Positions 30,701-43,056 of a stretch of 64,000 bases of DNA are shown here, one piece after another. The translations under genes and the position numbers were made by a program. This DNA is from Amphiscolops sp. MND2022 (lineage: Eukaryota). How positions within the stretch are numbered: position 1 is the stretch's first letter; each line of letters starts with the position of its first letter. The notes under the pieces were generated by a model that saw only the letters and a program-made list of their open reading frames with translations, did no database searches and was not told the origin of the DNA. The DNA is taken from positions 68,572,001-68,636,000 of the forward strand of contig OZ076411.1 in the NCBI GenBank assembly GCA_964187785.1, in the 5' to 3' direction.

Positions 30701-31115
30701 GAAATTCCGGCTAGATAGAACTGATCAATTCATTACAAGTGTATAAAATTTGAGTACCAGATGTGAAATCTCTACCACACACACACAAAAAAAATTTTTG
30801 TTCCAATAATAAGGATCCTTTTTGAAAAGCCTAGTGTTTTTAGGGGTCCTTTTCAGGGGCTTCTATGCTAATTCTTTTTGTTTAATTTATTTTATTGCCT
30901 GTTGTTTATGCCCTTTGATGAAATAAATTAATTTTATTACTATTAAAAAATTAATTTCAAAAATCTCAGCTTCATTCAGAAATAAAAAAACTTGCAGAAC
31001 TTCACGGCTTAAAACTTTCGCCTAATTTTTGATGAATTTTTCACGCAGTTTAGTATATCTATAGAAGTCAAATACAACTGGAAAATGTTTTCACCTAAAA
31101 GTCTCCGTTTGAGTT

Positions 31116-31949
31116 CCCGTACTGAGATCCCATCGCAGTTCATCGATGGCCATCGAAGTCCCATGGGGCATCGATGGGAATCGAAATTTTCGATCACAAA
31201 AATTTGTTCGACTTGGCCATGTTCAAAATTTCAACAAAACTCGTCAGTCTCTGTTTTTTTCAGTCTATTTAAGCTTTGTTTGGGACTTCGAGGATGCCCA
31301 AATATTTTAGTCGGAAATGAAGTTATACAGAGTTATCCATATTATTTATCTTTGTGAAAAACCGGATTCTGCTGATTTTCCAAGGAAAAAGCACCTTCTC
31401 TTTTGATACAAAAACATATCTTAAGAGGCAAATTTCTGCATATGTCAGATATTTTTTCTTCCCACAAGCAGATGGTTTTCTCAGCAATGGGAGCTTGATT
31501 CCGTCGCGTTTTCATACGTATAATTGCAATTTTGCCAGGTTTTTCTGATTTTCCAGAGAAAACTTCCAAATTTGTTTTATATAAATACGTATATTTAGAG
31601 TCAAGTTTCTGCATATTTCAGATATTTTTTCGTCTTACAAGCAGATGGTTTTCTTCACCAATGGAAGCTTGATTCCGTCGCATTTCCATGCGAATAATTG
31701 CAATTTCGCCAGGTTTTTAATTTTTTTTTCAAACAATTCAAGGGCAAGGCTCCGAAATAAGTAATTTTCAGGCTCGCGAATGCTTACTCAGGCTCAAAAG
31801 GAAATGAGAGTCGTTTAAAAATAGATATATTTAACTCTAAAATGCTCCACAAGTGCCCCCATGCGCTGGGCGATAATTCAAATCCCATCGATGGCCATCG
31901 ATGGTCCATCGATGTACATCGATGGGATTGAATGGAGTCTCAGTACGGG
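31116..31949. mobile_element. Non-autonomous DNA transposon (834 bp), CMC/EnSpm-like, with CCATCGATGG subterminal arrays
   Basis: TT|CCCGTACTGAGA...TCTCAGTACGGG|TT (TIR, 2-bp TT flanks). Repeated ATCGAT palindromes inside both ends; internal duplication of about 110 bp at 31435 and 31607. Confidence 0.85.
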
Positions 31950-32099
31950 TTATAGAAAATAATAAAAAAGTTCACGCAGTTCGAACAAGGGAAGAGATCT
32001 TATTATAATAAAAAAACTATATCAGCTTTCGGCGAAGCGTTCTCAATGAATACATTAATCTGGCATTAACTTTTTGATCCTTAAAGAATTGAACGACAA

Positions 32100-32827
32100 A
32101 TGCCATCAACTTCTTCCGAAGACAAAGAAAAAAGTGGTTACATGCCTTGGGAGTTCAAGCGACAAAGACCAGACAAACTCCCAGGTTTGCAAGATGTCTG
32201 GAGACTACCGGAACTGCCGGAAGGTCAAACATGTTGCGGAGAAGGTCAAAAATGTTTCTACTTTTCCTGCTCGAAATGTGCCTCAAAATTGGCACATGAT
32301 GTTTTGAATCCCGGATATGAAACTAGCATGCAATATATTCCAAGAATATCCTGCATTCCGCGGCCTGAACCTTTCAAAGAAGACAATAAGTATCACGGGG
32401 AAATTTATGAGATGTATTTGAACTATTTTGCCCAAATGAACCCACCTTTGAAAGGTGTGGCGATCAACGGTTGGGGAAATACCAATGCTGCTAATCTCTT
32501 CCACAATATTGCAAACACGTTCAAGGGAACGGGGAAGTTTGAAAAGAGCAAAGACTTTGAAATTGATTGGATTATACTCAACGGCTCAAGCATCACCGTG
32601 ATTGAAGTGAAAGAAAAATCTGAAACTTCGAAAGGCAAAAAGAAAAACTTCGAAACCAAAGTAGATCAAATCAAGAAAGACAGAGTCATTATGCAACGCC
32701 TGATGGAGGTTACAGGCACCGAAAAGACACGTGTGAATTACGTAATTGCCTGTCCCAATGTATCAATCACGGAGGTGACAGATGGCAACTTCTTGGGAAG
32801 TCACTGTCAGTTCCTGAAAGACATTGT
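32100..32827 (+). CDS. NERD-like PD-(D/E)xK nuclease-domain protein, first coding exon (ORF open to 32846 if unspliced)
   Basis: 248-codon stop-free ORF with HGEIYEMYL...DFEIDWIILNGSSITVIEVK...DQIKK...VNYVIACPN, the E/D-x11-EVK/Q pattern of NERD (Pfam PF08378). Cys cluster CCGEGQKCFYFSCSKC. GTTAGT donor at 32828. Confidence 0.75.
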
Positions 32828-32946
32828 GTTAGTTGTTCAAAACTAGTCATTTGGGTTTGTTTCAAATATTCACTCATTAGCTTTCTAAACAAAGGCAAAG
32901 GTTAGCAGAATATCTAATCTCAAATACTTGAAATGTACTGTTTTCC

Positions 32947-33190
32947 CCAGCACGTTATACCCGAATTTTGGACCTTAAATCCGAAGTAAGTTGCGTTTCA
33001 CTAAGGAGGAGGCAGAGGTTCGGAAAAAGCGCTCCCATTTGTCCCAGAACGCTATGTTCGAATTTTTGACAATTGTTCCGAACTGAATTGTTTTTACTAA
33101 GGAGCAAACGCGGAGGTTCGAAAAAAGCGTTCACATTCAGCCCAGCACGCTATATCCAAATTTTTAGCACTGAAGAGTAGACGAAGGTTC
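32947..33190 (+). repeat. Degenerate tandem repeat, period about 97 bp, about 2.5 copies (in the predicted intron)
   Basis: Units start CCAG(C/A)ACG(T/C)TAT at about 32947, 33043 and 33142 and share ACTAAGGAG..GAGGTTCG. Confidence 0.6.
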
Positions 33191-33722
33191 GAAAGTATTC
33201 TTTTATATATCTTGTACAACAATAAAAATGCAGTATATCCGGATTACTGATTTTTTTCCTAACTGCGCCTTGCCAAGCAGGGGGTGAAAATTTTCGTGTC
33301 AACTAGCCGTTTTGGACCCCTAGATGCAAGAACTGAGTTTTATTTTTCAGGTGAATTTTTACTTGGGTTGCTCGATACTTCTTTGAAACAATTTAACTTG
33401 AATGTATCATCTCGTTCCCCAAAAGTGTTTTCTAAAAATTATACAAAAAAAATCTAAGAGTCACGGCGCTTCTTATATGAATGTCTTTCCAGTATAATCT
33501 TGTTGTTTTTTGCATTGCAGTTTTATGAATTACTCCCAGCAATTTCAAAAAACTGTAATAGATAATGAAAGAGTATAAGGAAATAGATTAGGATAAATGA
33601 AAGAAAAAATCATTCTCCTCAACCATTTTACAGCGACGATAATCTGTTAAGGTTGTTTAAGTGACAATGTTTGCCTAAAATTTGTTAAATCAAGTTGGAG
33701 TTAGTTATATGTTTGTTTTCAG

Positions 33723-33985
33723 GGGTGCTGGCGATACTATCAGTTTCATCTCAGAAGAATGTTTTACGCATAGACAGGTTTACAAGTATAATCAAAACTC
33801 GAACGAACTCGAAAGCATGGATTTCAGATTTTTAATCAAAGAACCGACTGACAAGAACAACACGGCAGACCCCGTAAACAATCTTGCATGGGACGAGAGA
33901 TACAAGCACTTGTCAGCGACACTGATTTTGTCTATACTGATCATCGGCAACGTAATCGATGACAAACCCCAACACTTATACCCAC
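33723..33985 (+). CDS. Probable second exon of the NERD-domain gene
   Basis: Acceptor TTTGTTTTCAG at 33722 in phase 2 matches the exon-1 donor (..FLKDIV|GAGDTISFISEECF..). Open frame ends at a GTTAGT donor (33986). Confidence 0.5.
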
Positions 33986-34057
33986 GTTAGTAATACTTCT
34001 ATCTCGTTTTTCCTAAATTAGAAAACTCTCAAAGTTATTTTTCTATAGTCTCTGCAG

Positions 34058-34417
34058 AGACTTGTTTCTAATTCGAATACCTCCTAAAAATCTTGTAATA
34101 GATTTTATTCAATCTTTACCCACTTGACATTGACTCTTCTTTTCTTATCCTTGTCATTCAGATACTCCAAATTGAACATTGAGTCGACGGGTGCTAAATG
34201 ACAGAGAGTTAGGTAAACGTGATCTTGTATTTCTCAACTTTTTACACTTAGAAAAAGGCTCCCAAAACCATGGAACAAGAAAACAAAATTAGACGTTAAA
34301 TCATTTCTACATACTATGATATCATGAAAAGAAAAGAAGATTGAATGTCAAGTGGGTGAAGATTGAATAAAATCTATGACAAGATTTTCAGGAGGTGTTC
34401 GAAATAGAAACAAGTCT
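34058..34417. mobile_element. Foldback MITE (about 360 bp) with about 90-bp inverted arms
   Basis: 34058-34146 (AGACTTGTTTCTAATTCGAATACCTCC...) is the near reverse complement of 34327-34417 (...GGAGGTGTTCGAAATAGAAACAAGTCT). No clear TSD. Confidence 0.85.
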
Positions 34418-34868
34418 GAGTACGAACCTTATGTGCATATCACTGTATCATTATCTGTCATGCCCACTGGGAGCAAAAACTGAAAATTCTTTCAAAAAAG
34501 CTCTGGAATCCACCTTGCAGTTAATAACATCTCGAACTTATTGTTTTGAGTCATAGAACCATTATTCAAATGTTTCGTTAGGAGGGTTATCAAAAAAGGA
34601 AAAGAAGAAAATTCTTTATTTAGAAGCATCGGAATCAGAAAATTTGGTTGCAATGATTTATAAACTTTGCCATTATCAGAAGGCCGAGACCATAGGAGTA
34701 GTAGGTCAATCTAAAGATACTTTTAGACAACTTTTGTCTTCGTGGCCAATATAATGAAATTACTGCTTGTTTGAGTGTGCGCAATCAGTCACAAGCGAAA
34801 ACTTGTTACGTATTCAAGCAAACACCTTTCAATCACAGGAAAATGAGCATTCAAGTATTTCGTTGGAT

Positions 34869-35879
34869 GCGGGACAAAAGGGGGAAGTAAATAACTTCTA
34901 AATAAATAACTTCTAATTAATATAGTAAACAACTTCTAAATAAATAAGTTCTAAAATTATTTTAGTAAATAACTTCTAAATTGCAATGGCATCTAGTAAA
35001 TAACTTCCAAACAGCTATTTTGACGTAATTATTTCTATAACGTCGTTAGCTATGTTCACATACCCCTAGTGCCCTAAATGCAGGCCATATGGCCATGCCT
35101 CAATGTTGCTACTTGGCGAAGGGAGCGAAGCGACGGGACGAGCCATACAACAAATATGCTAATCTTTTCAAATAACAGTTTTCGGAATAATAGAACGGTA
35201 AGTTTATTTTCGGAATAATGGAACGGTTAATTTATTTTCGGAAGAATGAATAGCAATCTTTACTAGAATGATTTCAGAAGTTACCAGACGCAAATGCATT
35301 TTAGAAGTTATTTACTAATATAATTTTACAACTTATTTATTTAGAAGTTATTTACTAATATAATTTTAGAACTTATTTATTTAGAAGTTATTTACTAATA
35401 TAATTTTAGAACTTATTTATTTAGAAGTTATTTACGTGATCCGGACAAAACAGCCGATTTTCAAAACGGGACAAAACAGCCGATTTTCAAAACGGGAGAA
35501 AACAGCCGATTTTCAAAACGGAACAAAATGAGTGCTGTTACAGCCGATATGCATGGAACTTGGTTTATTTGAAGAGGTTCATATTTGTTGTATGGCTCGG
35601 TCGCTTCGCTCCCTTCGCCAAGTAACAACATTGAGGCATGGCCATATGGCACGTCGCTCCGCTTCGCTTCGCTCCTGCATTTAGGGCACTAGGAGTATGT
35701 GAACATAGCTGACTACGTTATAATAATTATTTTATTGACTGCTAATCTTAAGCATTGACAAAATCGGCGATTTTTATATTTACCAATCGGCGATTTTGTA
35801 CTGTTTTAAAATCTGCTCTTTTGTCCTATTTTGAAAATCGGCTGTTTTGTCCCGTTTAAAATCGGCTGTTTTGTCCCGC
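34869..35879. repeat. Composite element of three interleaved inverted-repeat pairs (A B A' C B' C')
   Basis: A 34886-35000 and A' 35295-35435 (AGTAAATAACTTCTAA arrays); B 35041-35175 and B' 35560-35717; C 35441-35530 and C' 35830-35879; outer GCGGGACAAAA...TTTTGTCCCGC. Confidence 0.85.
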
Positions 35880-38439
35880 TCCCATTTCGTTGTATATCTG
35901 TGACCCACTTCTTGCTACTAACTGGAAAACTTCAAATATTCCAAAGTTCATGCCCGAATTCAAAACTTATCTTATGCTCGAACTCTCATCAAAGAAGCAA
36001 CGAGGAGGTAGATTGTTGACGACAAACGAACTTGAGCGATAATTGAGAACAGAGAAATTTGTAGGAATTCTAGTTTAAGGCAGTTTGTCAAGTTTTGCCA
36101 GTTCAGTCCATTAGACAGGTTGTTTCTTATTACGTAATTGTATCTTTTTGCACCAACAACTTTCTCACAGTACTTGAAAGCTTCATCACACTTCCCTCAC
36201 TCAAAAACATTCCCTCACCGATGAACGACGATTTACAACATAAATGACACCAAATATAAATAGCTACATATACATGTATAGTATTCAAATTAACATCATC
36301 GGGTCAGTATTGACCATATGGGTATATATACTGCTGCTTGTAAGTTCGTTAATTTAGTGTTTTTCAGGTTTGGGTATTTCATACACGCTTGGCAGACTAC
36401 CTTCATCAAGGCTTGAAGTTGGCTCATTTTTTGAAATCATAACGTTATGTCCCAACCAATTTGGCTTCTTGGTCACTACGGCGGAATTTCGTGTTTGATT
36501 CTTTTCCCATTTAACGGTTCCTTTGATGGGTGCTCCTTCACTAAGCCCCGTTCACTTCTCTCCTTCTTTTGTATTTGATTAAGTCTGTGGGTCCATCTCA
36601 TCTCTAGCTGGTTCTTCTGGGTGTTCTCTCATCTGAATTTCCTTAGGTTATTGACCAATGTCATCGCTGCTGTCCTTTCAGATTTATTGTTCTTCAACTT
36701 TTGCCATTTTTTGTACTTGCCACTTTTTCGCAATTTGGCACTTTCGTTTTTTTTATCCTTGTTTTCTGTAATTGGCAGTATGCTGCATTGCAGTTTGTCT
36801 TCGCTTTCGCTAGGTTTTGTGACGGTTTGACCTTTGTGTCCAAGTCATTTCGAAAACACAGCTTCAAACGGACCTTTGCCTGACCACTTGGTTGCAAATA
36901 TTGTACCATAGCTTGCTATAAAGAGATGGTATCTGAAAAGGTGCCGACCTAAAAGAAAAAAAAGCTTATTCGACGTCCATTTTGAGGAATTAGGGCAATG
37001 CACTTTCTTCATCATCATTCCGCACAATTTGATTAAAGGATGGAAATGGGAGCAGTTTTTAAGAGTACTCATTGTCGAAACTCCGAGAGCACCTTTTAAA
37101 ATCACAAATCAATAATAAAGGCTTTCTGGAACACAAATTTGTAGAATTGCTTACAAAAATCAGAGTCTCTATTACACATAACAATAAAATCAGAGGAACG
37201 AAGAAGTTATTTTCACCTTCTAGTAAAAAAAACGACAGGAGAAATCAGAACTCAAAATTCATGACCAAGCCATCAATCTTTTAAAAACTTGGCATTTCAT
37301 TGCAATCACCACCAGTGACGTTGGATGTGAAAATGCAATTTTTCAAAAACGAGTACATACGGAATAATTGAAAGAAGTTGCTGGCTACAAATTGAATGAA
37401 TTCAACTAAAGCCGAGGATTTATATCCATCGAGACAAGGGTTACGATCATTTACTGTCATAGCCGTACAAAGGCACCAAACACCAGGGCGTTGTCAATTT
37501 TCTTAACAGAGTTATACACCGAAGAAATTACACTACAGCAAAAACACATTGTCGCAGGGCTGCCGCCTGTGACGGCAACAAGTATCAAGTAGCCCCTAAA
37601 GACAGCCATCTGTCTCATATACCGGAGTTCTACCACTGTGATCAATTGGACAATTGGTCCTTTTGCCATAAACTTTTAGATTTGAATTAGTATGTTTAAA
37701 ATATAAATTAGTTTAGATTACTGTTATTAGACATGTAACATACACTAGTAAAGATGTTTACCATAAATTGATGATTAATGCTTTTTAGATTGATAATTGA
37801 AACAGGTACTGTAAAATAACTGTATGCAATATAGAAAACGCGTTCAAAGCGAATTTCACTTTGGTCAACTCGACGCGCAGTCTCCTTTGATTAATAACCA
37901 ATCACGTGCTAGAATACTCTAGCCGTGCGTGCCACAGGTCCAATGTGCTGTATTTACTAACGTAATGTAGTCTAGCGGACGGCTAATCCACCGCGCTGTA
38001 TTATTCTCATATAGAATAATAAGTAAACAAGTGCTTGTCATTCAAACCATTCGCTACATAACTTGAAAGGCTGACAGCCTTCCAGTCCCCCCATTCTATT
38101 TATAGCATCAGAGCCAAATCGATGCTATTTTAGGGTATGACCTAACAGTGATGTAATACTGACGTCAGACCAAAGGGCTATCTTAACCCACATTAGTTAC
38201 TATTTTTAGAAACAAGATCATCTTAATTTTGCTAGTCATGCTCTAAATACTATAAAAAGCTGACCCCCGTAGTCCTTGGGACAGAACGTTGAATACGACG
38301 CTACAAACCAGTATACACAAATTGTTGCTCATTGACGAATCTTTGCTATAATCTTGTTCTGTTTTGCATACTCTCAGTTCAATTTTAGTTAACAGATAAA
38401 AGCTCAAATATAATCATTCGCAAGCAATGAATTCTTCGA

Positions 38440-39045
38440 ATGCCCTCAACAAGGAAGCAAATGGCTAAAGAGAAATGGTCCAGACAATCGGACGTTATGT
38501 CCGGCTTAGAGAATGTGGATATAATGTTAGGAAATTACTCTGGAAATGACCTAGACAGTCAGTTAGGAGAGAGAGAAACTGGAGGGGACCTTGAGTCCAC
38601 TGGACTTCAGACAACTAATCCCATCTGTGAGAATTTCAGATCCCTAATTAATATAAATAGCCGAGAAAATAGTGAGATTACCATTGAGACCGCGAGGTTG
38701 ATAAACAATGAGATCACCACCCAAGTTACCAGAAAACTAGACGAGCTTAAGGAAGACTTAAATACACAAATTTTGGAAGTTATCAACCCAGCAATTGCTG
38801 AAAAGGTGCTCCCTAGCATTCAAAATGTACTAGGAGTGGCAAATTCGGTATTAAATGCAACTAGGGGCCACCAGTCCGGTAGACTAGATAGGATCCCCGA
38901 AGATAACTTAGGCCATATGGACCACCGGACCCGGGGTCTTGATAAGGGTCACAGGGACCATTCTAGTATTGCGGACCACTGGTCCAAAGGACTAAATAAG
39001 GGGCCCAGAGACCATTCTAGTCATATGGGCCACCAGTCCGGTTGA
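38440..39045 (+). pseudogene. gag-like N-terminal ORF (201 aa, MPSTRKQ...) ending in an 18-aa tandem repeat
   Basis: MPSTR start and coiled coil (VTRKLDELKEDLNTQILEVIN); repeats continue in frame past the TGA at 39043. Confidence 0.6.
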
Positions 39046-39190
39046 CAATATGAGAACCCAGGAGACCTATATAGTCAAGTAGACGACAAGTCTACGAGAC
39101 CAGTCAAAAGTTCTAAAAGTTATCTTGGCATATCGGCCCACAGGTCCACTAGACTAGACAATAGATCAGGAGAACTTTTTGGTCTTCAGG
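38866..39190 (+). repeat. 54-bp (18-codon) degenerate coding tandem repeat, 6 copies
   Basis: Unit starts at 38866, 38920, 38974, 39028, 39082 and 39136 read GHQSGRLD, DHRTRGLD, DHWSKGLN, GHQSG*, DDKSTR and AHRSTRLD. Confidence 0.85.
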
Positions 39191-39572
39191 ACCAACATGA
39201 CCACAGCAAACTAGTTTCCAAATTCAGCAGTCATGGAGGTTTGAACAGAGAAATCCCCGGCTTGAGACCAAGACTTCGACACACATGAACTCCAAAAGAG
39301 AGATGTTCCAATCTAGTTAGAATTACGCCACAAAGACGACATAATTGAGATCAACGAAACCCACTAACAAAACCAGTCCAAATTATCACCCCCAAAACCT
39401 GATAAACATATTCAAAATGCGCCAGGCAACCGAATGAACTGCGAAATACGTCCTTCAAATTGGAGAAAAATCGATTCAGCACCTATTCGCTCTTGGTTTT
39501 AAAAAGTGTTTGGGAAGTCAACCTTCACTCTCAAGAAATTCCACAGTATTCAACAAGCATGGGAAATGGACG

Positions 39573-39735
39573 ATTGAGTCCCAAATGCAAAAAGCGACAA
39601 TTGAGTGCCAAAATAAATTAAATTTAGGGGGTCGACAATTGAGTCCCGCCACAATTTCTTTGGGACTCAATTGTCGCGGGCCTCAATTGACGCTTTTTTG
39701 CATTTGGGACTCAATTTGTAATGGGACTCAATTTT
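39573..39735. repeat. Small palindromic element built from AATTGAGTCCC / GGGACTCAATT motifs
   Basis: 39573-39605 is the inverse of 39682-39715, with a nested hairpin at 39636-39675; about 7 motif copies. Confidence 0.8.
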
Positions 39736-41429
39736 TTTTTGGAAAGTGTAAACCATCGGAACTAATACACAAAACGGTTAACTAAAAAACCTTCACAATC
39801 CACAAAATGTGACTAAAATGCAAAGGAGGTAGTAATTAAAACAGTGTAAATTTAGCAGTCAAACATGGATTATGGAAAAAAGCATACATATTATTCAAGA
39901 TCATTATTGTCATTGTAGAGTATATCTTACAATTTGAGCTTACCGAGTTTCGATGCATATAGATAAATAACATTTTATACACATAACATTATAATGCTGT
40001 TGAAAATAGATCCATTTTGATTAACTGCTTTATTTCTCTGTACACAGTTTAAAATACAGCCGATTTTGGTCTCGACTAATTCGATAAACCCAAGTAAACA
40101 AAGTAACCGAACCAACAAATATGACAGAAAAACTTATCGTACCATATCTAGAAGCCTCAGCACACGACGGAAAACCGGATTCACACACAGACAATGACTA
40201 GAGAGACTCCGACAACTTACCAGAAGAGAACACAGCATGGACATCATGCAAAGGAGAAGAAAATACAGAAAACCGATGAATGGGAAAAAACACAAGCGTA
40301 GAGGAAGACTTGAATTGGGACATCGGACTTTAAGTACGGCGAAACAGAAGCGCCAAATCAAATGAAATCATAAAAACGAAATTACCCGAGATACAAAAAT
40401 TAACAAATCGTACTAAGACGAAAACAAGAATGAAGTAATAATCAGGGAAGGCTACAAACATGCATCAAAAACGAAAGGTTTCAAACATCGAGAAGGAAAA
40501 ACGGAATTTATAATTTAGGAGAAAACTGGTTTATCGCCAATACTCGGAATTTATTAGGTTAGAAATTTCAAGCTAATTTTCGAAGAAGACAGTTCGCTGA
40601 CAACAACCAGTGAAAGAAGGAGAAAACACTGAAAATATTTCATGTCTGAGAAAAAAACAGATCAACCAACCACGCCAAAACGAACATACAATTCTGACCA
40701 GGACATAATTCGGTAAATTAAAATGAGTGACCATTACTAGTGCCTTGCCTTGATAAGACGGGAGGAAACGATCTGAAAAAAAAATAGTACAAACACCCAG
40801 CAAGAACTATTCATGTAAATGAGGATTCTTTTCTATCTCTGGTACTAATTACCCGAAGAGCATTAAAAAGCTAGAAATAAAATTCAACTCACGGAAACCA
40901 GAAAACACTGTGTAAAAACGGCACCACACATTTCGACGCACGGTTGAGCGATTGAATCAAATTTCGGTAGAACTTACAATAGACCGAACAGTGCAACTTC
41001 TCAAACCAAAAATTCCGGTTTGGATTACCTATAGAGGCAATTGAACTTATCCGAAGAAACAAACCGACAATGCGTGTTCCATTCAATCAACCGGGGAAAA
41101 ACTTAGTTGATAATAAAGATTCAAAACAGGATTCACGGAGTTCCTAATCTACCCAATCTTTCGCAAAACGAAAACGGCCGAACAGTTGAAAAGTGTACAC
41201 CTGCATTTTTGGACGATTTAATAACAGTAACACGCAATAGTAAACAGGACTATGGAAACAAGCTGCTCAAGATACTAAGCAAACTAGAAAAAGCAGGATA
41301 CCGTGAGAACAAAAGGAAATCAGCCTTTTTCATGACCCGAAGATATTGGTTGGGACAAAACAACCGAGTGAAACTGAACGAAGAAAGAAAAACAAGGGAG
41401 TACCCTTTAATAAAATTCAAAAATTTTTG

Positions 41430-41700
41430 GAACAATGTCGCATAGTGCCGAAAAAAACAGCAAATGGGGGACCCTTTGGTCTCCCCTCTACTTTTGGAAG
41501 CATTAAAAAATTGTGGTTTAGTGCGAAACGCGAACCCACACTCTCCTGCTTCTCAGACCCCATAAAATCCGTGTTAACCTCTCGGCCAAGAAGTTGAACA
41601 AATGAACAAAAAAAGTGGACCGATCGCGTTGAACTGACGAAACAAAACTAGCCACTGTAAGAGTCGTGCCTTTTCATCGAAAACGCCGACTAAAAACGGA
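41430..41700. repeat. Further copy of the GTGCCGAAAA/GGGGACCCTTT interspersed repeat inserted in the Gypsy remnant
   Basis: CATAGTGCCGAAAAAA..GGGGGACCCTTTGG at 41440-41480 and AAAACTAGCCACTGTAAGAGTCG..ACGCCGACTAAAAA at 41644-41697. Confidence 0.7.
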
Positions 41701-42856
41701 TAAACATACAAAACTACTGAAAAAAGACAAATGAATGCTGTGTCTAAATGACCACAAAATGATTTCACCAGAATTGAACAGATGATAACCAAAAAACATT
41801 GCTAGCATATACGCAGAAAACAAGCATAACATGGTTATTGCAGAAACTAGCAAATATCGGTTTGACACTGTGGTTGCAACAAGATGACCGAAACAAAACG
41901 CTTACCGAGCAAATAGCTAAATGATACTGAAACGAAAAAATCTATCGGAAACAAATAGAAATATTTAAATACTTATACTCTATATGCTATATCTAAACAA
42001 AAGAAATGTAGCATCTATATAGTTGAAGTGACATTTTTTGCACTCTCCCGATCGGACAAAGAAGAACTTGCGGAGAATGACGCTGAGTAGCTACTGCTGG
42101 AGAATAGACTGGGGGTTGCTACAGGCCCAAGGAAGCAGACACCGACAATCCGGAAGAAAGCCGTCATATAGAAAAGAGGACAATGTGATCATTAGGGGTG
42201 ACACTTTGCCAATCAGAGACTTGAGGCAATAAAACTTGGAGGTGAATTGAGCCTTTTATAAACAGATAAAGTTTCAGTGAGAAAACTATCGAACAATTTG
42301 AAAGTCACCGGGGAGACTATAAAACGTTCCGAAATCGAATTCAAGATTGACATGAAGAGCCTGATATCCAAAAGAGCAACGGTCGCAGCAGAGACAAGGT
42401 GAGAACCATGAGATGCACAGACAAAAACAGAGCAAACGGTGGGTATGAACCGGTTATTGATGAATTGTTAGTACAGCGAGACCCGCTCTTTGACGACGAT
42501 CTAATTGTTGTCTCGTTCGACTTCAGGAGACAGCTATTGAACATACAGCATGTGAAAGAATGCATTCACAAGAACTTTATCGAAAAAAAGTAGAGATGTT
42601 CAAATACTAACAGCAATGAATCGTTTTTGTGAATGGTTGACAGTAGAAGTATGCAAAACTTCAGAAACCAAAAAAGTAGAAAATTCTTCAGCATTATTTC
42701 CATTGCAGGAAACGGGCTGAAAAAGACCCGTCTTCACCTAGAAAGACTTGATACTAGCTAAGCTTGAAGACGGGGAACGAAAGTACCAAAAGAGTAAAAC
42801 TGGCATTACGAGTGATTGACGGAAAATTGTAAAACCGACTCGAGTGAAATATTACA

Positions 42857-43056
42857 NNNNNNNNNNNNNNNNNNNNNNNNNNNNNNNNNNNNNNNNNNNN
42901 NNNNNNNNNNNNNNNNNNNNNNNNNNNNNNNNNNNNNNNNNNNNNNNNNNNNNNNNNNNNNNNNNNNNNNNNNNNNNNNNNNNNNNNNNNNNNNNNNNNN
43001 NNNNNNNNNNNNNNNNNNNNNNNNNNNNNNNNNNNNNNNNNNNNNNNNNNNNNNNN
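42857..43056. other. Assembly gap (200 N)
   Basis: Run of exactly 200 N, typical of a fixed-length scaffolding spacer. Confidence 1.

What the first reader, a model, noticed from the sequence alone, without database searches (positions are those of the whole stretch)
32100..33985. Intron-containing animal gene with an intact NERD/PD-(D/E)xK nuclease domain
A 248-codon stop-free ORF in a region where nearly everything else is decayed carries the full catalytic pattern (GE..., EIDWIIL, IEVK, Q) plus an N-terminal Cys cluster, and splices in phase to a second exon. NERD domains were described mainly from prokaryotes, often fused to helicases. Nuclease-helicase fusions are a recurrent anti-virus/anti-transposon design, as in animal Schlafens with a different nuclease. 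Inference: an uncharacterised invertebrate innate-defence nuclease, a horizontal acquisition, or cargo of a large mobile element.
Basis: partly seen in the sequence, partly recalled or inferred. Interest (0 to 1): 0.7.

Follow-up and report, generated by a model that had tools for sequence, protein, structure and literature searches.

The report
First exons of NERD-helicase gene
The stretch holds the first two coding exons of one copy of an animal gene family that joins a restriction-enzyme-like (NERD) nuclease to a Schlafen-like helicase; in this copy the helicase exons lie beyond an assembly gap, on the opposite strand, and carry a frameshift.

Summary
A 248-codon ORF (32100-32846, +) and an in-phase second exon (33723-33985) are present. 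Both end at invariant GTTAGT donors, and conservation among four sister copies stops exactly at the splice sites.

Exon 1 passes the Pfam NERD threshold narrowly. It keeps E101, D156, E169-x-K171 and Q190. It folds (pLDDT 78) into the alpha-beta-beta-beta-alpha-beta nuclease core, and its structural neighbours are almost all PD-(D/E)xK nucleases (Z 5-7). Its dN/dS against the sister copies is 0.09-0.22.

These are only the 5' third of a gene. In 26 of 31 family loci a P-loop/SF1-helicase exon follows on the same strand; the best fold match is human SLFN11.

This copy has no such exon in the window. Its likely partner lies 190 kb away on the minus strand, 1.2 kb inside a second 200-N gap. A mis-oriented scaffold piece or a real inversion would explain this. 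The partner exon also has a private 5-nt insertion that breaks the frame.

No RNA data were available. A defence role is inference only.

The scan has already flagged this family on other DNA of this genome (s1-183088 and others). It is a new variant of a known kind, and this copy is possibly defective.

The parts
31969..32099 (+). Conserved upstream stretch (5' UTR or core promoter) of the gene.
   Evidence: Homology to the four sister copies starts 70-130 bp before the ATG, at 31969-32064, and not earlier.
32100..32827 (+). Coding exon 1: 242 codons plus 2 nt. It encodes an N-terminal Cys4 cluster and the NERD-type PD-(D/E)xK nuclease domain.
   Evidence: ORF. The GTTAGT donor at 32828 is invariant in 5 copies and conservation drops after it. 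Pfam NERD scores 23.1 bits against a gathering score of 22.1. dN/dS is 0.09-0.22.
32235..32279 (+). Cys cluster C46-x5-C52-x4-C57-x2-C60 (plus C45), a putative zinc knuckle.
   Evidence: Among aligned family members that cover the region, C46 is kept in 19/24, C52 in 21/23, C57 in 22/26 and C60 in 22/27. pLDDT there is about 85, with no regular secondary structure. Metal binding is inferred.
32391..32765 (+). PD-(D/E)xK (NERD) catalytic core, residues 98-222. Helix 1 carries E101, strand 2 carries D156, strand 3 carries E169-V-K171, helix 2 carries Q190, followed by strand 4 and the PN220 motif.
   Evidence: Conservation is E101 30/32, D156 32/32, E169 31/32, Q190 30/32 and K171 13/32, with K/R173 in 25/32. 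AlphaFold2 element order is H101-107, E120-126, E154-160, E164-170, H183-205, E211-217. Structural neighbours are PD-(D/E)xK nucleases.
32828..33722 (+). Intron 1 (895 nt, GT..AG). It contains a high-copy repeat at about 32900-33099.
   Evidence: Splice sites are conserved in 5 copies. The intron interior cannot be aligned between copies.
33723..33985 (+). Coding exon 2 (263 nt; enters in phase 2, leaves in phase 1). It encodes an 87-residue linker with the conserved motif W-D/E-E-x-YKHLSATL.
   Evidence: Exon 2 is found downstream of exon 1, on the same strand, in the four sister copies (73-85% aa) and in at least 8 more distant copies. The acceptor TTTGTTTTCAG and donor GTTAGT are invariant. 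dN/dS is 0.14-0.42. It has no Pfam match.
33986..42856 (+). Start of intron 2, running into the assembly gap. It is filled with repeats: a MITE-like element at 34900-35899, a retroelement ORF at 38431-39042 and RT debris at 41107-41594.
   Evidence: No helicase-type exon occurs anywhere in the window. Repeat depth is and the ORFs.
42857..43056 (.). 200-N assembly gap. The likely continuation of the gene lies outside the window: exon 3 from C3:68797379 and exon 4 to C3:68794986, both on the minus strand, 1.2 kb inside a second 200-N gap at C3:68798587-68798786.
   Evidence: Gap positions are. The distal ORFs of 310 and 459 aa are. It is the only helicase exon of this five-member subfamily that has no exon 1-2 of its own.

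Best explanation
Window 32100-33985 holds coding exons 1 and 2 of one member of a lineage-restricted, multi-copy (30 or more loci) intron-bearing gene family. The full product is about 1,000-1,100 residues: an N-terminal Cys4 knuckle, a NERD-type PD-(D/E)xK nuclease, an 87-residue linker, an SF1 (Schlafen/Upf1-like) helicase core and a helical tail.

Shown: the exons, their splice sites, the nuclease fold and catalytic residues, purifying selection on exons 1-2, and the family architecture.

Inferred (about 75%): this copy's helicase exons are the pair at C3:68797379-68794986 (minus strand), separated from exon 2 by a scaffold piece that is mis-oriented in the assembly or truly inverted. That exon 3 carries a private 5-nt insertion. 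Normal splicing would therefore end the protein about 40 codons into exon 3, before the Walker A motif. This copy is thus either a very recently disabled gene, a NERD-only truncated protein, or rescued by a downstream AG acceptor.

Inferred mechanism for the family (about 35%): the ATP-driven helicase loads on or senses foreign or aberrant nucleic acid (virus or transposon) and delivers it to, or licenses, the Mg-dependent NERD nuclease. This is how bacterial single-chain nuclease-helicase defence proteins (Nhi) work, and by analogy Schlafens.

The confidence given (0.7) is for the identity and gene-structure reading, not for the defence mechanism.
For: - ORF and splice signals.
- Splice sites are invariant and conservation edges fall at exon borders in 5 copies.
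- Exon 2 follows exon 1 on the same strand in at least 12 loci.
- 26 of 31 NERD-exon places have a helicase exon downstream on the same strand within 100 kb.
- Pfam NERD scores 23.1 bits against a gathering score of 22.1, and 17 of 32 relatives hit NERD at E<=0.01.
- Catalytic residues are conserved.
- The AlphaFold2 model of exon 1 has pLDDT 77.6, pTM 0.73 and alpha-beta-beta-beta-alpha-beta order.
- The VIA-align top hits are the Upx C-terminal PD-(D/E)xK domain (Z 7.2), XisH (6.7), Can2 (5.6), NucS, Card1, SduA and HamA (about 5.1). Upx is described in PMC13099982.
- The Foldseek list is dominated by PD-(D/E)xK nucleases.
- dN/dS is 0.09-0.22 for exon 1 and 0.14-0.42 for exon 2, at dS 0.13-0.58.
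- The helicase part shows the motifs GxGKS/T, LILIDE, YRxPxNI, FTGxxYxxV and LYxAISRxxxR.
- Foldseek's best match for the helicase part is human SLFN11 (E 1.2e-8), then ToMV helicase, Dna2, SLFN14, IGHMBP2 and Upf1.
- The PADLOC Nhi model hits this copy's exon 3 at E 1.3e-5.
- Partner assignment: the subfamily has five exon-1 copies and five exon-3 copies. The distal exon 3 lies 1.2 kb from a 200-N gap, and the window's exon 2 lies 8.9 kb from another. dS of exon 3 (0.46-0.57) matches dS of exon 1 (0.31-0.51).
- Frameshift.
Against: - There is no RNA evidence for any junction or for expression. All four runs found are DNA contigs.
- The NERD score is only 1 bit above threshold. PDB matches are of middling strength (Z 5-7, Foldseek E>=0.05), so the fold call rests on consistency of the hit list rather than one strong match.
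- The catalytic Lys (K171) is Gly in 15 of 32 relatives. It is present in this copy.
- The helicase model is of low confidence (pLDDT 54.7), and no helicase Pfam family reaches its gathering score.
I also could not verify the 5-nt insertion in reads.
- A MITE sits 150 bp upstream of the ATG and may impair the promoter.
- The defence role has no direct evidence.
Confidence: 0.7

Rival explanations
1. Broken copy. The gene was cut by a real chromosomal inversion and/or killed by the 5-nt frameshift and the upstream MITE. Exons 1-2 look intact only because the damage is recent.
For: The helicase exons are on the opposite strand 190 kb away. The 5-nt insertion is unique to this copy. A MITE sits 150 bp upstream of the ATG and is absent from a sister copy. 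This is one of only 5 of 31 loci without a co-oriented helicase exon.
Against: Exons 1 and 2, and the 310- and 459-codon helicase ORFs, are all free of stops. Pairwise dN/dS of this copy is no higher than that of its sisters. Both 'breakpoints' coincide with 200-N scaffold gaps, which is what a mis-oriented contig looks like. An AG 26 nt downstream of the normal acceptor would restore the frame (read from the sequence).
Confidence: 0.3
2. Stand-alone short NERD protein. Exons 1-2 (read-through of either GTTAGT donor meets a stop within 2-6 codons) give a 248- or 331-residue nuclease that works without a helicase.
For: Stops follow both donors closely. With the frameshift, the predicted product is a NERD protein of about 370 residues. 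Exons 1-2 are under stronger constraint than the helicase exon.
Against: The stops lie inside the conserved donor motif GT-TAG-T and occur in all sister copies that do have helicase exons, so they are not evidence of a terminal exon. Nearly all family members are fusions.
Confidence: 0.12
3. Cargo or protein of a large mobile element.
For: There are many copies in the genome. Retroelement debris surrounds every copy.
Against: k-mer depth over the exons is near single-copy level, while flanking repeats reach 1e4-1e6. Sister copies share only exons plus 70-130 bp upstream, with no terminal repeats or common flanks. Intron lengths range from 0.2 to 37 kb with conserved splice sites. No transposase, integrase or Rep is linked in a fixed order.
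Confidence: 0.04
4. Recent horizontal transfer from a bacterium or virus.
For: NERD and its nearest structural neighbours are mainly prokaryotic defence nucleases. The PADLOC Nhi model hits the helicase exon.
Against: phmmer found no prokaryotic protein at E<=1e-3 among 1.84 billion representatives. All 40 hits are ORF-sized pieces on long eukaryote-like ENA contigs. Spliceosomal introns sit at conserved positions, and paralogues have diverged to below 30% identity. An ancient transfer cannot be excluded.
Confidence: 0.04

Closest known systems
Bacterial NERD-helicase fusions, including Nhi (nuclease-helicase immunity; PADLOC PDLC02372)
   Same: One chain carries an N-terminal NERD-like PD-(D/E)xK nuclease followed by an SF1 helicase. 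The Nhi model hits this copy's helicase exon at E 1.3e-5. Nhi is listed among SF1/SF2 helicase defence proteins in PMC12278908.
   Different: The match covers only model positions 183-273 of 470, the Walker A region. The family here is eukaryotic and intron-split. It has an extra Cys4 knuckle, an 87-residue linker and a helical tail of about 300 residues, and it has expanded to 30 or more loci. No detectable sequence relative exists in bacteria.
Group III Schlafens (SLFN11, SLFN13, SLFN14)
   Same: They are animal proteins that join an N-terminal nuclease to a C-terminal SF1 helicase. The helicase part of the family gives SLFN11 as the best Foldseek match (E 1.2e-8) and SLFN14 close behind. 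Schlafens are likewise a multi-copy, fast-evolving family.
   Different: The nuclease is a NERD/PD-(D/E)xK domain, not the Schlafen AlbA_2 horseshoe RNase. Pfam SLFN-g3_helicase scores 16.1 bits, below its gathering score of 24. The resemblance is convergent or very distant.
Dna2 (eukaryotic nuclease-helicase)
   Same: It has a PD-(D/E)xK nuclease N-terminal to an SF1B helicase in one eukaryotic chain. Dna2 is among the top Foldseek matches of the helicase part (E 1.2e-7).
   Different: By established knowledge, Dna2's nuclease is RecB-like with an iron-sulfur cluster whose cysteines straddle the core, and it is a single-copy essential replication and repair gene. Here the four Cys are contiguous and lie N-terminal to the core, the nuclease scores as NERD, and the gene is multi-copy.
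Upx C-terminal domain, Can2/Card1, Shedu SduA, Hachiman HamA (prokaryotic defence PD-(D/E)xK nucleases)
   Same: These are the nearest solved folds of the exon-1 model: Z 7.2 for Upx, then 5.6-5.1 for the others, over 107-136 aligned residues covering residues 76-242. The Upx C-terminal domain holds the canonical catalytic core (PMC13099982).
   Different: Sequence identity is 8-14%, and the partner domains differ (CARF, second nuclease, separate helicase subunit). They share only a fold and a probable chemistry with this family.

Membership tests
NERD (Pfam PF08378) | Profile score at or above the curated gathering score. | tested here: met
   The score is 23.1 bits against 22.1, E 1.1e-4, residues 142-215 on model positions 32-107 of 111. 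This is marginal, but 17 of 32 aligned relatives also hit NERD at E<=0.01, the best at 25.7 bits.
NERD (Pfam PF08378) | Catalytic pattern: E in helix 1, D in strand 2, (D/E)xK in strand 3. | tested here: met
   E101, D156 and E169-V-K171 are all present in the window copy. Conservation is 30/32, 32/32 and 31/32. K171 is kept in only 13/32, but K/R173 occurs in 25/32.
PD-(D/E)xK (restriction-endonuclease-like) fold | Alpha-beta-beta-beta-alpha-beta core, with solved PD-(D/E)xK nucleases as the nearest structures. | tested here: met
   The AlphaFold2 model has pLDDT 77.6 and the expected element order. The top 24 VIA-align rows are all PD-(D/E)xK nucleases or nuclease-bearing proteins, apart from two Schlafen rows, at Z 7.2-4.2. 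Foldseek gives E>=0.05 but the same kind of hits. Z values are middling, so this is consistent rather than conclusive.
PD-(D/E)xK (restriction-endonuclease-like) fold | Metal-dependent nuclease activity. | not testable with these tools
   This needs a purified protein and D156/E169/K171 mutants.
Nhi-type single-chain nuclease-helicase defence proteins | Nuclease and SF1 helicase in one polypeptide. | tested here: inconclusive
   The feature is met for the family: there are contiguous or colinear exons in 26 of 31 loci. For this copy the helicase exons are across a gap, inverted and frameshifted.
Nhi-type single-chain nuclease-helicase defence proteins | Match to the family profile over most of its length. 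| tested here: not met
   PADLOC Nhi gives E 1.3e-5 but covers only positions 183-273 of 470. The NERD exon does not hit Nhi.
Schlafen group III | N-terminal Schlafen core (AlbA_2) and a SLFN-g3 helicase profile match. | tested here: not met
   The window protein has no AlbA_2 hit, and only 1 of 32 relatives has one, at E 8e-4. SLFN-g3_helicase scores 16.1 bits against a gathering score of 24. Only the helicase fold is similar.
SF1 helicase | Motifs I, II, IV, V and VI, and two RecA-like domains. | tested here: inconclusive
   Motif-like strings are conserved in alignment A3. Foldseek matches to SF1 helicases have probability 1.00 and E 1e-8 to 1e-6 over about 360 columns. However, the model's mean pLDDT is 54.7, and no helicase Pfam family passes its threshold.
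Transposable element | High copy number, terminal repeats, linked transposase or integrase, and shared flanks. | tested here: not met
   only exons are shared between copies, k-mer depth over the exons is low, and no common termini are found.

The most novel reading that the evidence does not exclude
These combine a NERD nuclease, otherwise a prokaryotic defence module, with a Schlafen-like SF1 helicase whose sensor half evolves several times faster than the nuclease. That would be an independent animal counterpart of bacterial Nhi and of vertebrate Schlafens, acting against viruses or the abundant retroelements of this genome.
Probability: 0.3. Interest if true: 0.75.

Novelty: new variant of a known kind. 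Interest (0 to 1): 0.5.

Why it matters
Single-chain nuclease-helicase proteins recur in defence, from bacterial Nhi to animal Schlafens. NERD domains, however, have hardly been described in animals. Searches of 1.84 and 5.8 billion proteins found no named relative of this family. If the family is expressed and active, it would be a lineage-specific expansion of a prokaryote-type nuclease module wired to a Schlafen-like motor. That would make it a useful case for how immune architectures are reinvented.

This particular copy adds two practical points. First, the family's long, transposon-filled introns make its genes easy to split across scaffold gaps, so gene models and copy counts for it depend on contig orientation. 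Second, the contrast between a conserved nuclease exon (omega about 0.15) and a fast helicase exon (omega about 0.5-0.8) points to where any specificity might lie.

Tried and rejected
- RNA evidence: the look-up of sequencing runs (kind rna) returned only four runs of one sample. Read laying showed them to be DNA contigs of even depth across introns. There is therefore no test of the junction or of expression.
- Sequence search of PDB with the ORF and with the family profile returned no hits. The helicase profile gave only PcrA at E 0.057.
- NCBIfam gave nothing useful.
- The ESM Atlas search by features gave only unnamed or weak NERD/Mrr/PDDEXK clusters at 0.82-0.90. These are leads only.
- Search for a third exon in the window: tBLASTn with four helicase-exon peptides gave no hit better than E 0.6. 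The conserved block at 35650-35733 is a repeat end, not an exon. The block at 38431-38860 is a retroelement ORF.
- Looking for one transposon split across the gap to prove the flip: comparison of the four contig ends gave only a short shared repeat, which is uninformative.
- The search for homologous proteins with the 701-aa helicase exon and with the NERD profile returned only unnamed ENA proteins. They come mostly from one assembly (ERZ25074608), which seems to be the same or a very close organism, and one other (ERZ26859043). The taxonomic spread therefore stays unknown.
- Literature searches found no paper on animal NERD-helicase genes.
Full report
**Observation.** The + strand ORF 32100..32846 (248 aa) exists. 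It is the longest ORF on that strand for about 10 kb either way. Exon 1 would end at 32827, before GTTAGT. Exon 2 would run 33723-33985, after TTTGTTTTCAG and before a second GTTAGT, and the phases fit.

**Gene structure.** The genome (1.07 Gb; the window is C3:68572001-68636000) holds 41 tBLASTn matches to exon 1. Four are close (83-89% aa), about eight lie at 50-57%, and most are stop-free.
- In the four close copies, DNA similarity starts 70-130 bp before the ATG and ends just after the GTTAGT at the end of exon 1.
- Exon 2 recurs downstream of exon 1 on the same strand in these four copies (73-85% aa) and in at least eight distant ones.
- In the close copies, exon 2 is again bounded exactly by the invariant acceptor and donor.
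- Intron interiors do not align, and intron 1 ranges from about 0.2 to several kb.

These are real, conserved spliceosomal exons. The short read-through stops after both donors lie inside the donor motif (GT-TAG-T) and are shared by all copies, so they say nothing about a terminal exon.

**The rest of the gene.** Distant paralogues showed further colinear blocks.
- In the compact copy on C253, a single 701-codon exon follows exon 2. It carries GEVGCGKT (Walker A) and LILIDE (Walker B).
- A genome search with this exon found 45 matches.
- 26 of 31 NERD-exon places have such an exon downstream on the same strand within 100 kb.
- Alignment A3 shows SF1-like motifs: GxGKS/T, LILIDE, YRxPxNI, FTGxxYxxV and LYxAISRxxxR.
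- Pfam gives only sub-threshold P-loop hits: AAA_22 at E 2e-5 and SLFN-g3_helicase at 16.1 bits against a gathering score of 24.
- The AlphaFold2 model of the 701-aa exon is poor overall (pLDDT 54.7) but moderately confident (block means mostly 55-90) over residues 40-370.
- Its Foldseek matches are SF1 helicases at E 1e-8 to 1e-6: human SLFN11 first, then ToMV helicase, Dna2, SLFN14, IGHMBP2, Upf1 and nsp13.

**This copy.** No helicase-type exon exists anywhere in the 64-kb window.
- The only unpaired helicase exon of the five-member subfamily lies at C3:68797379-68796434 (310-codon ORF). It is followed by a 459-codon ORF running to C3:68794986. Both are on the minus strand, about 190 kb away.
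- This pair sits 1.2 kb inside a 200-N gap at C3:68798587-68798786. The window's exon 2 sits 8.9 kb before another 200-N gap at 42857-43056.
- Turning the piece between the gaps would place exon 3 about 10 kb after exon 2 on the + strand. That is within the 0.6-34 kb range seen for this intron in the sister copies.
- Synonymous divergence agrees with the pairing: exon 3 against its sisters gives dS 0.46-0.57, and exon 1 against its sisters gives 0.31-0.51. The C3a/C3b pair is the closest in both.
- I rate 'one gene, piece mis-oriented or inverted' at about 75%. I could not tell assembly error from true inversion, nor check for further gaps in between.

The distal exon 3 also has a 5-nt insertion, about 80 nt after the acceptor, that none of the four sisters has. 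The frame coming from exon 2 stops after about 40 codons, before the Walker A motif. Everything behind the insertion is still open, so the change is recent or bypassed. An AG 26 nt downstream of the normal acceptor would restore the frame (read from the sequence, untested).

**The nuclease domain.**
- Pfam NERD scores 23.1 bits against a gathering score of 22.1, and 17 of 32 relatives hit NERD at E<=0.01.
- In alignment A2, conservation is E101 30/32, D156 32/32, E169 31/32 and Q190 30/32. K171 is kept in 13/32 (Gly in 15), but K/R173 occurs in 25/32. The window copy has both. Four Cys (46, 52, 57, 60) are conserved wherever the region is present.
- AlphaFold2 on A2 gave pLDDT 77.6 and pTM 0.73, with the order helix(101-107)-strand-strand(154-160)-strand(164-170)-helix(183-205)-strand. 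D156 lies in strand 2 and E169/K171 at the end of strand 3.
- Foldseek against PDB found nothing below E 0.05, but the list is dominated by Can2, N.BspD6I, arenavirus endonuclease, AddAB, NucS, Hjc and the R2 endonuclease.
- VIA-align gave Z 7.2 for the Upx C-terminal domain, 6.7 for XisH, 5.6 for Can2, and about 5.1-5.4 for Bse634I, AF1548, NucS, Card1, SduA and HamA. The Upx C-terminal domain is the canonical PD-(D/E)xK core of a defence nuclease (PMC13099982).
- ESM Atlas models with NERD, UPF0102 and PDDEXK labels agree.

The support is consistent rather than strong.

**Selection.** Pairwise Nei-Gojobori estimates among the five close copies give:
- exon 1: dN/dS 0.09-0.22;
- exon 2: dN/dS 0.14-0.42, at dS 0.13-0.58;
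- helicase exon 3: dN/dS 0.47-0.83.

Divergence is thus not neutral. The helicase half evolves several times faster than the nuclease half.

**Origin.**
- phmmer against 1.84 billion representatives found only 40 proteins. All are at most 312 aa (ORF-sized exon calls) and lie on long ENA contigs with retroelement neighbours.
- Profile and helicase searches against 5.8 billion proteins again found only unnamed ENA entries, from two assemblies.
- There is no bacterial relative, no named animal protein, low k-mer depth over the exons and no shared flanks.

These results argue against both transposon cargo and recent horizontal transfer.

**Earlier notes of this scan.** The same family was flagged on other pieces of this genome. 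One follow-up (s1-183088) called it a six-exon NERD-helicase gene with at least 30 copies in an 'acoel-type' genome. My counts and architecture agree. I did not test the taxon.

**Mechanism.** By analogy with bacterial NERD-helicase proteins such as Nhi, with Schlafens and with Dna2, the likeliest working model has three steps. An SF1 motor binds or translocates on a nucleic acid, a metal-dependent NERD nuclease cuts it, and the variable helicase half supplies target choice. Only the parts list is shown here. The activities and any defence role are inferred (about 35%).

**Limits.** There are no RNA data. One fold model is weak. Gap orientation is unresolved. The frameshift is unverified in reads.

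Noticed in passing
window 31116-31949: A MITE-like element with 49-nt terminal inverted repeats and very high copy number (k-mer depth about 1e4 against 30-60 baseline). It is inserted about 150 bp upstream of the gene's ATG. In sister copy L002 the flanks 30943-31116 and 31969-32914 are contiguous.
   Followed up: partly
window 34900-35899: An extremely high-copy repeat (depth 1e5-1e6) with inverted ends at 35019-35084 and 35667-35731, inside intron 2. Its ends also occur near sister copies and mimic a small conserved exon in tBLASTx.
   Followed up: partly
window 38431-39042 and 41107-41594: A 204-codon coiled-coil ORF without a Pfam match, followed by reverse-transcriptase debris. A related ORF lies downstream of exon 2 in two sister copies (42-63% aa). 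It is probably a retroelement gag/ORF1 that often lands in this intron.
   Followed up: partly
L030/L029 (C3:68781122-68790441, minus strand): A Ty3/Gypsy element with long open gag-like, protease, RT-RNaseH-integrase (1163-codon ORF) and downstream ORFs. It lies just 3' of the distal helicase exons.
   Followed up: no
L025:3313-5415 versus L030:4986-7363: The helicase part is one 701-codon exon in the C253 copy, but in the window's subfamily it is split by an intron just before the FTGVxY motif. This indicates intron gain or loss within the family.
   Followed up: partly
G000 C1:13351952, 13360010, 13368072: Three tandem NERD exons at 8-kb spacing, each with the same two stops, upstream of a single helicase exon at C1:13380453. 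This is a tandemly triplicated, disabled first exon.
   Followed up: no
alignment A2, column of residue 171: The catalytic Lys of E-x-K is Gly in about half of the family (EVGMR instead of EVKEK), while a basic residue two positions on is kept in 25 of 32. This may be a migrated Lys/Arg or inactive subfamilies.
   Followed up: partly
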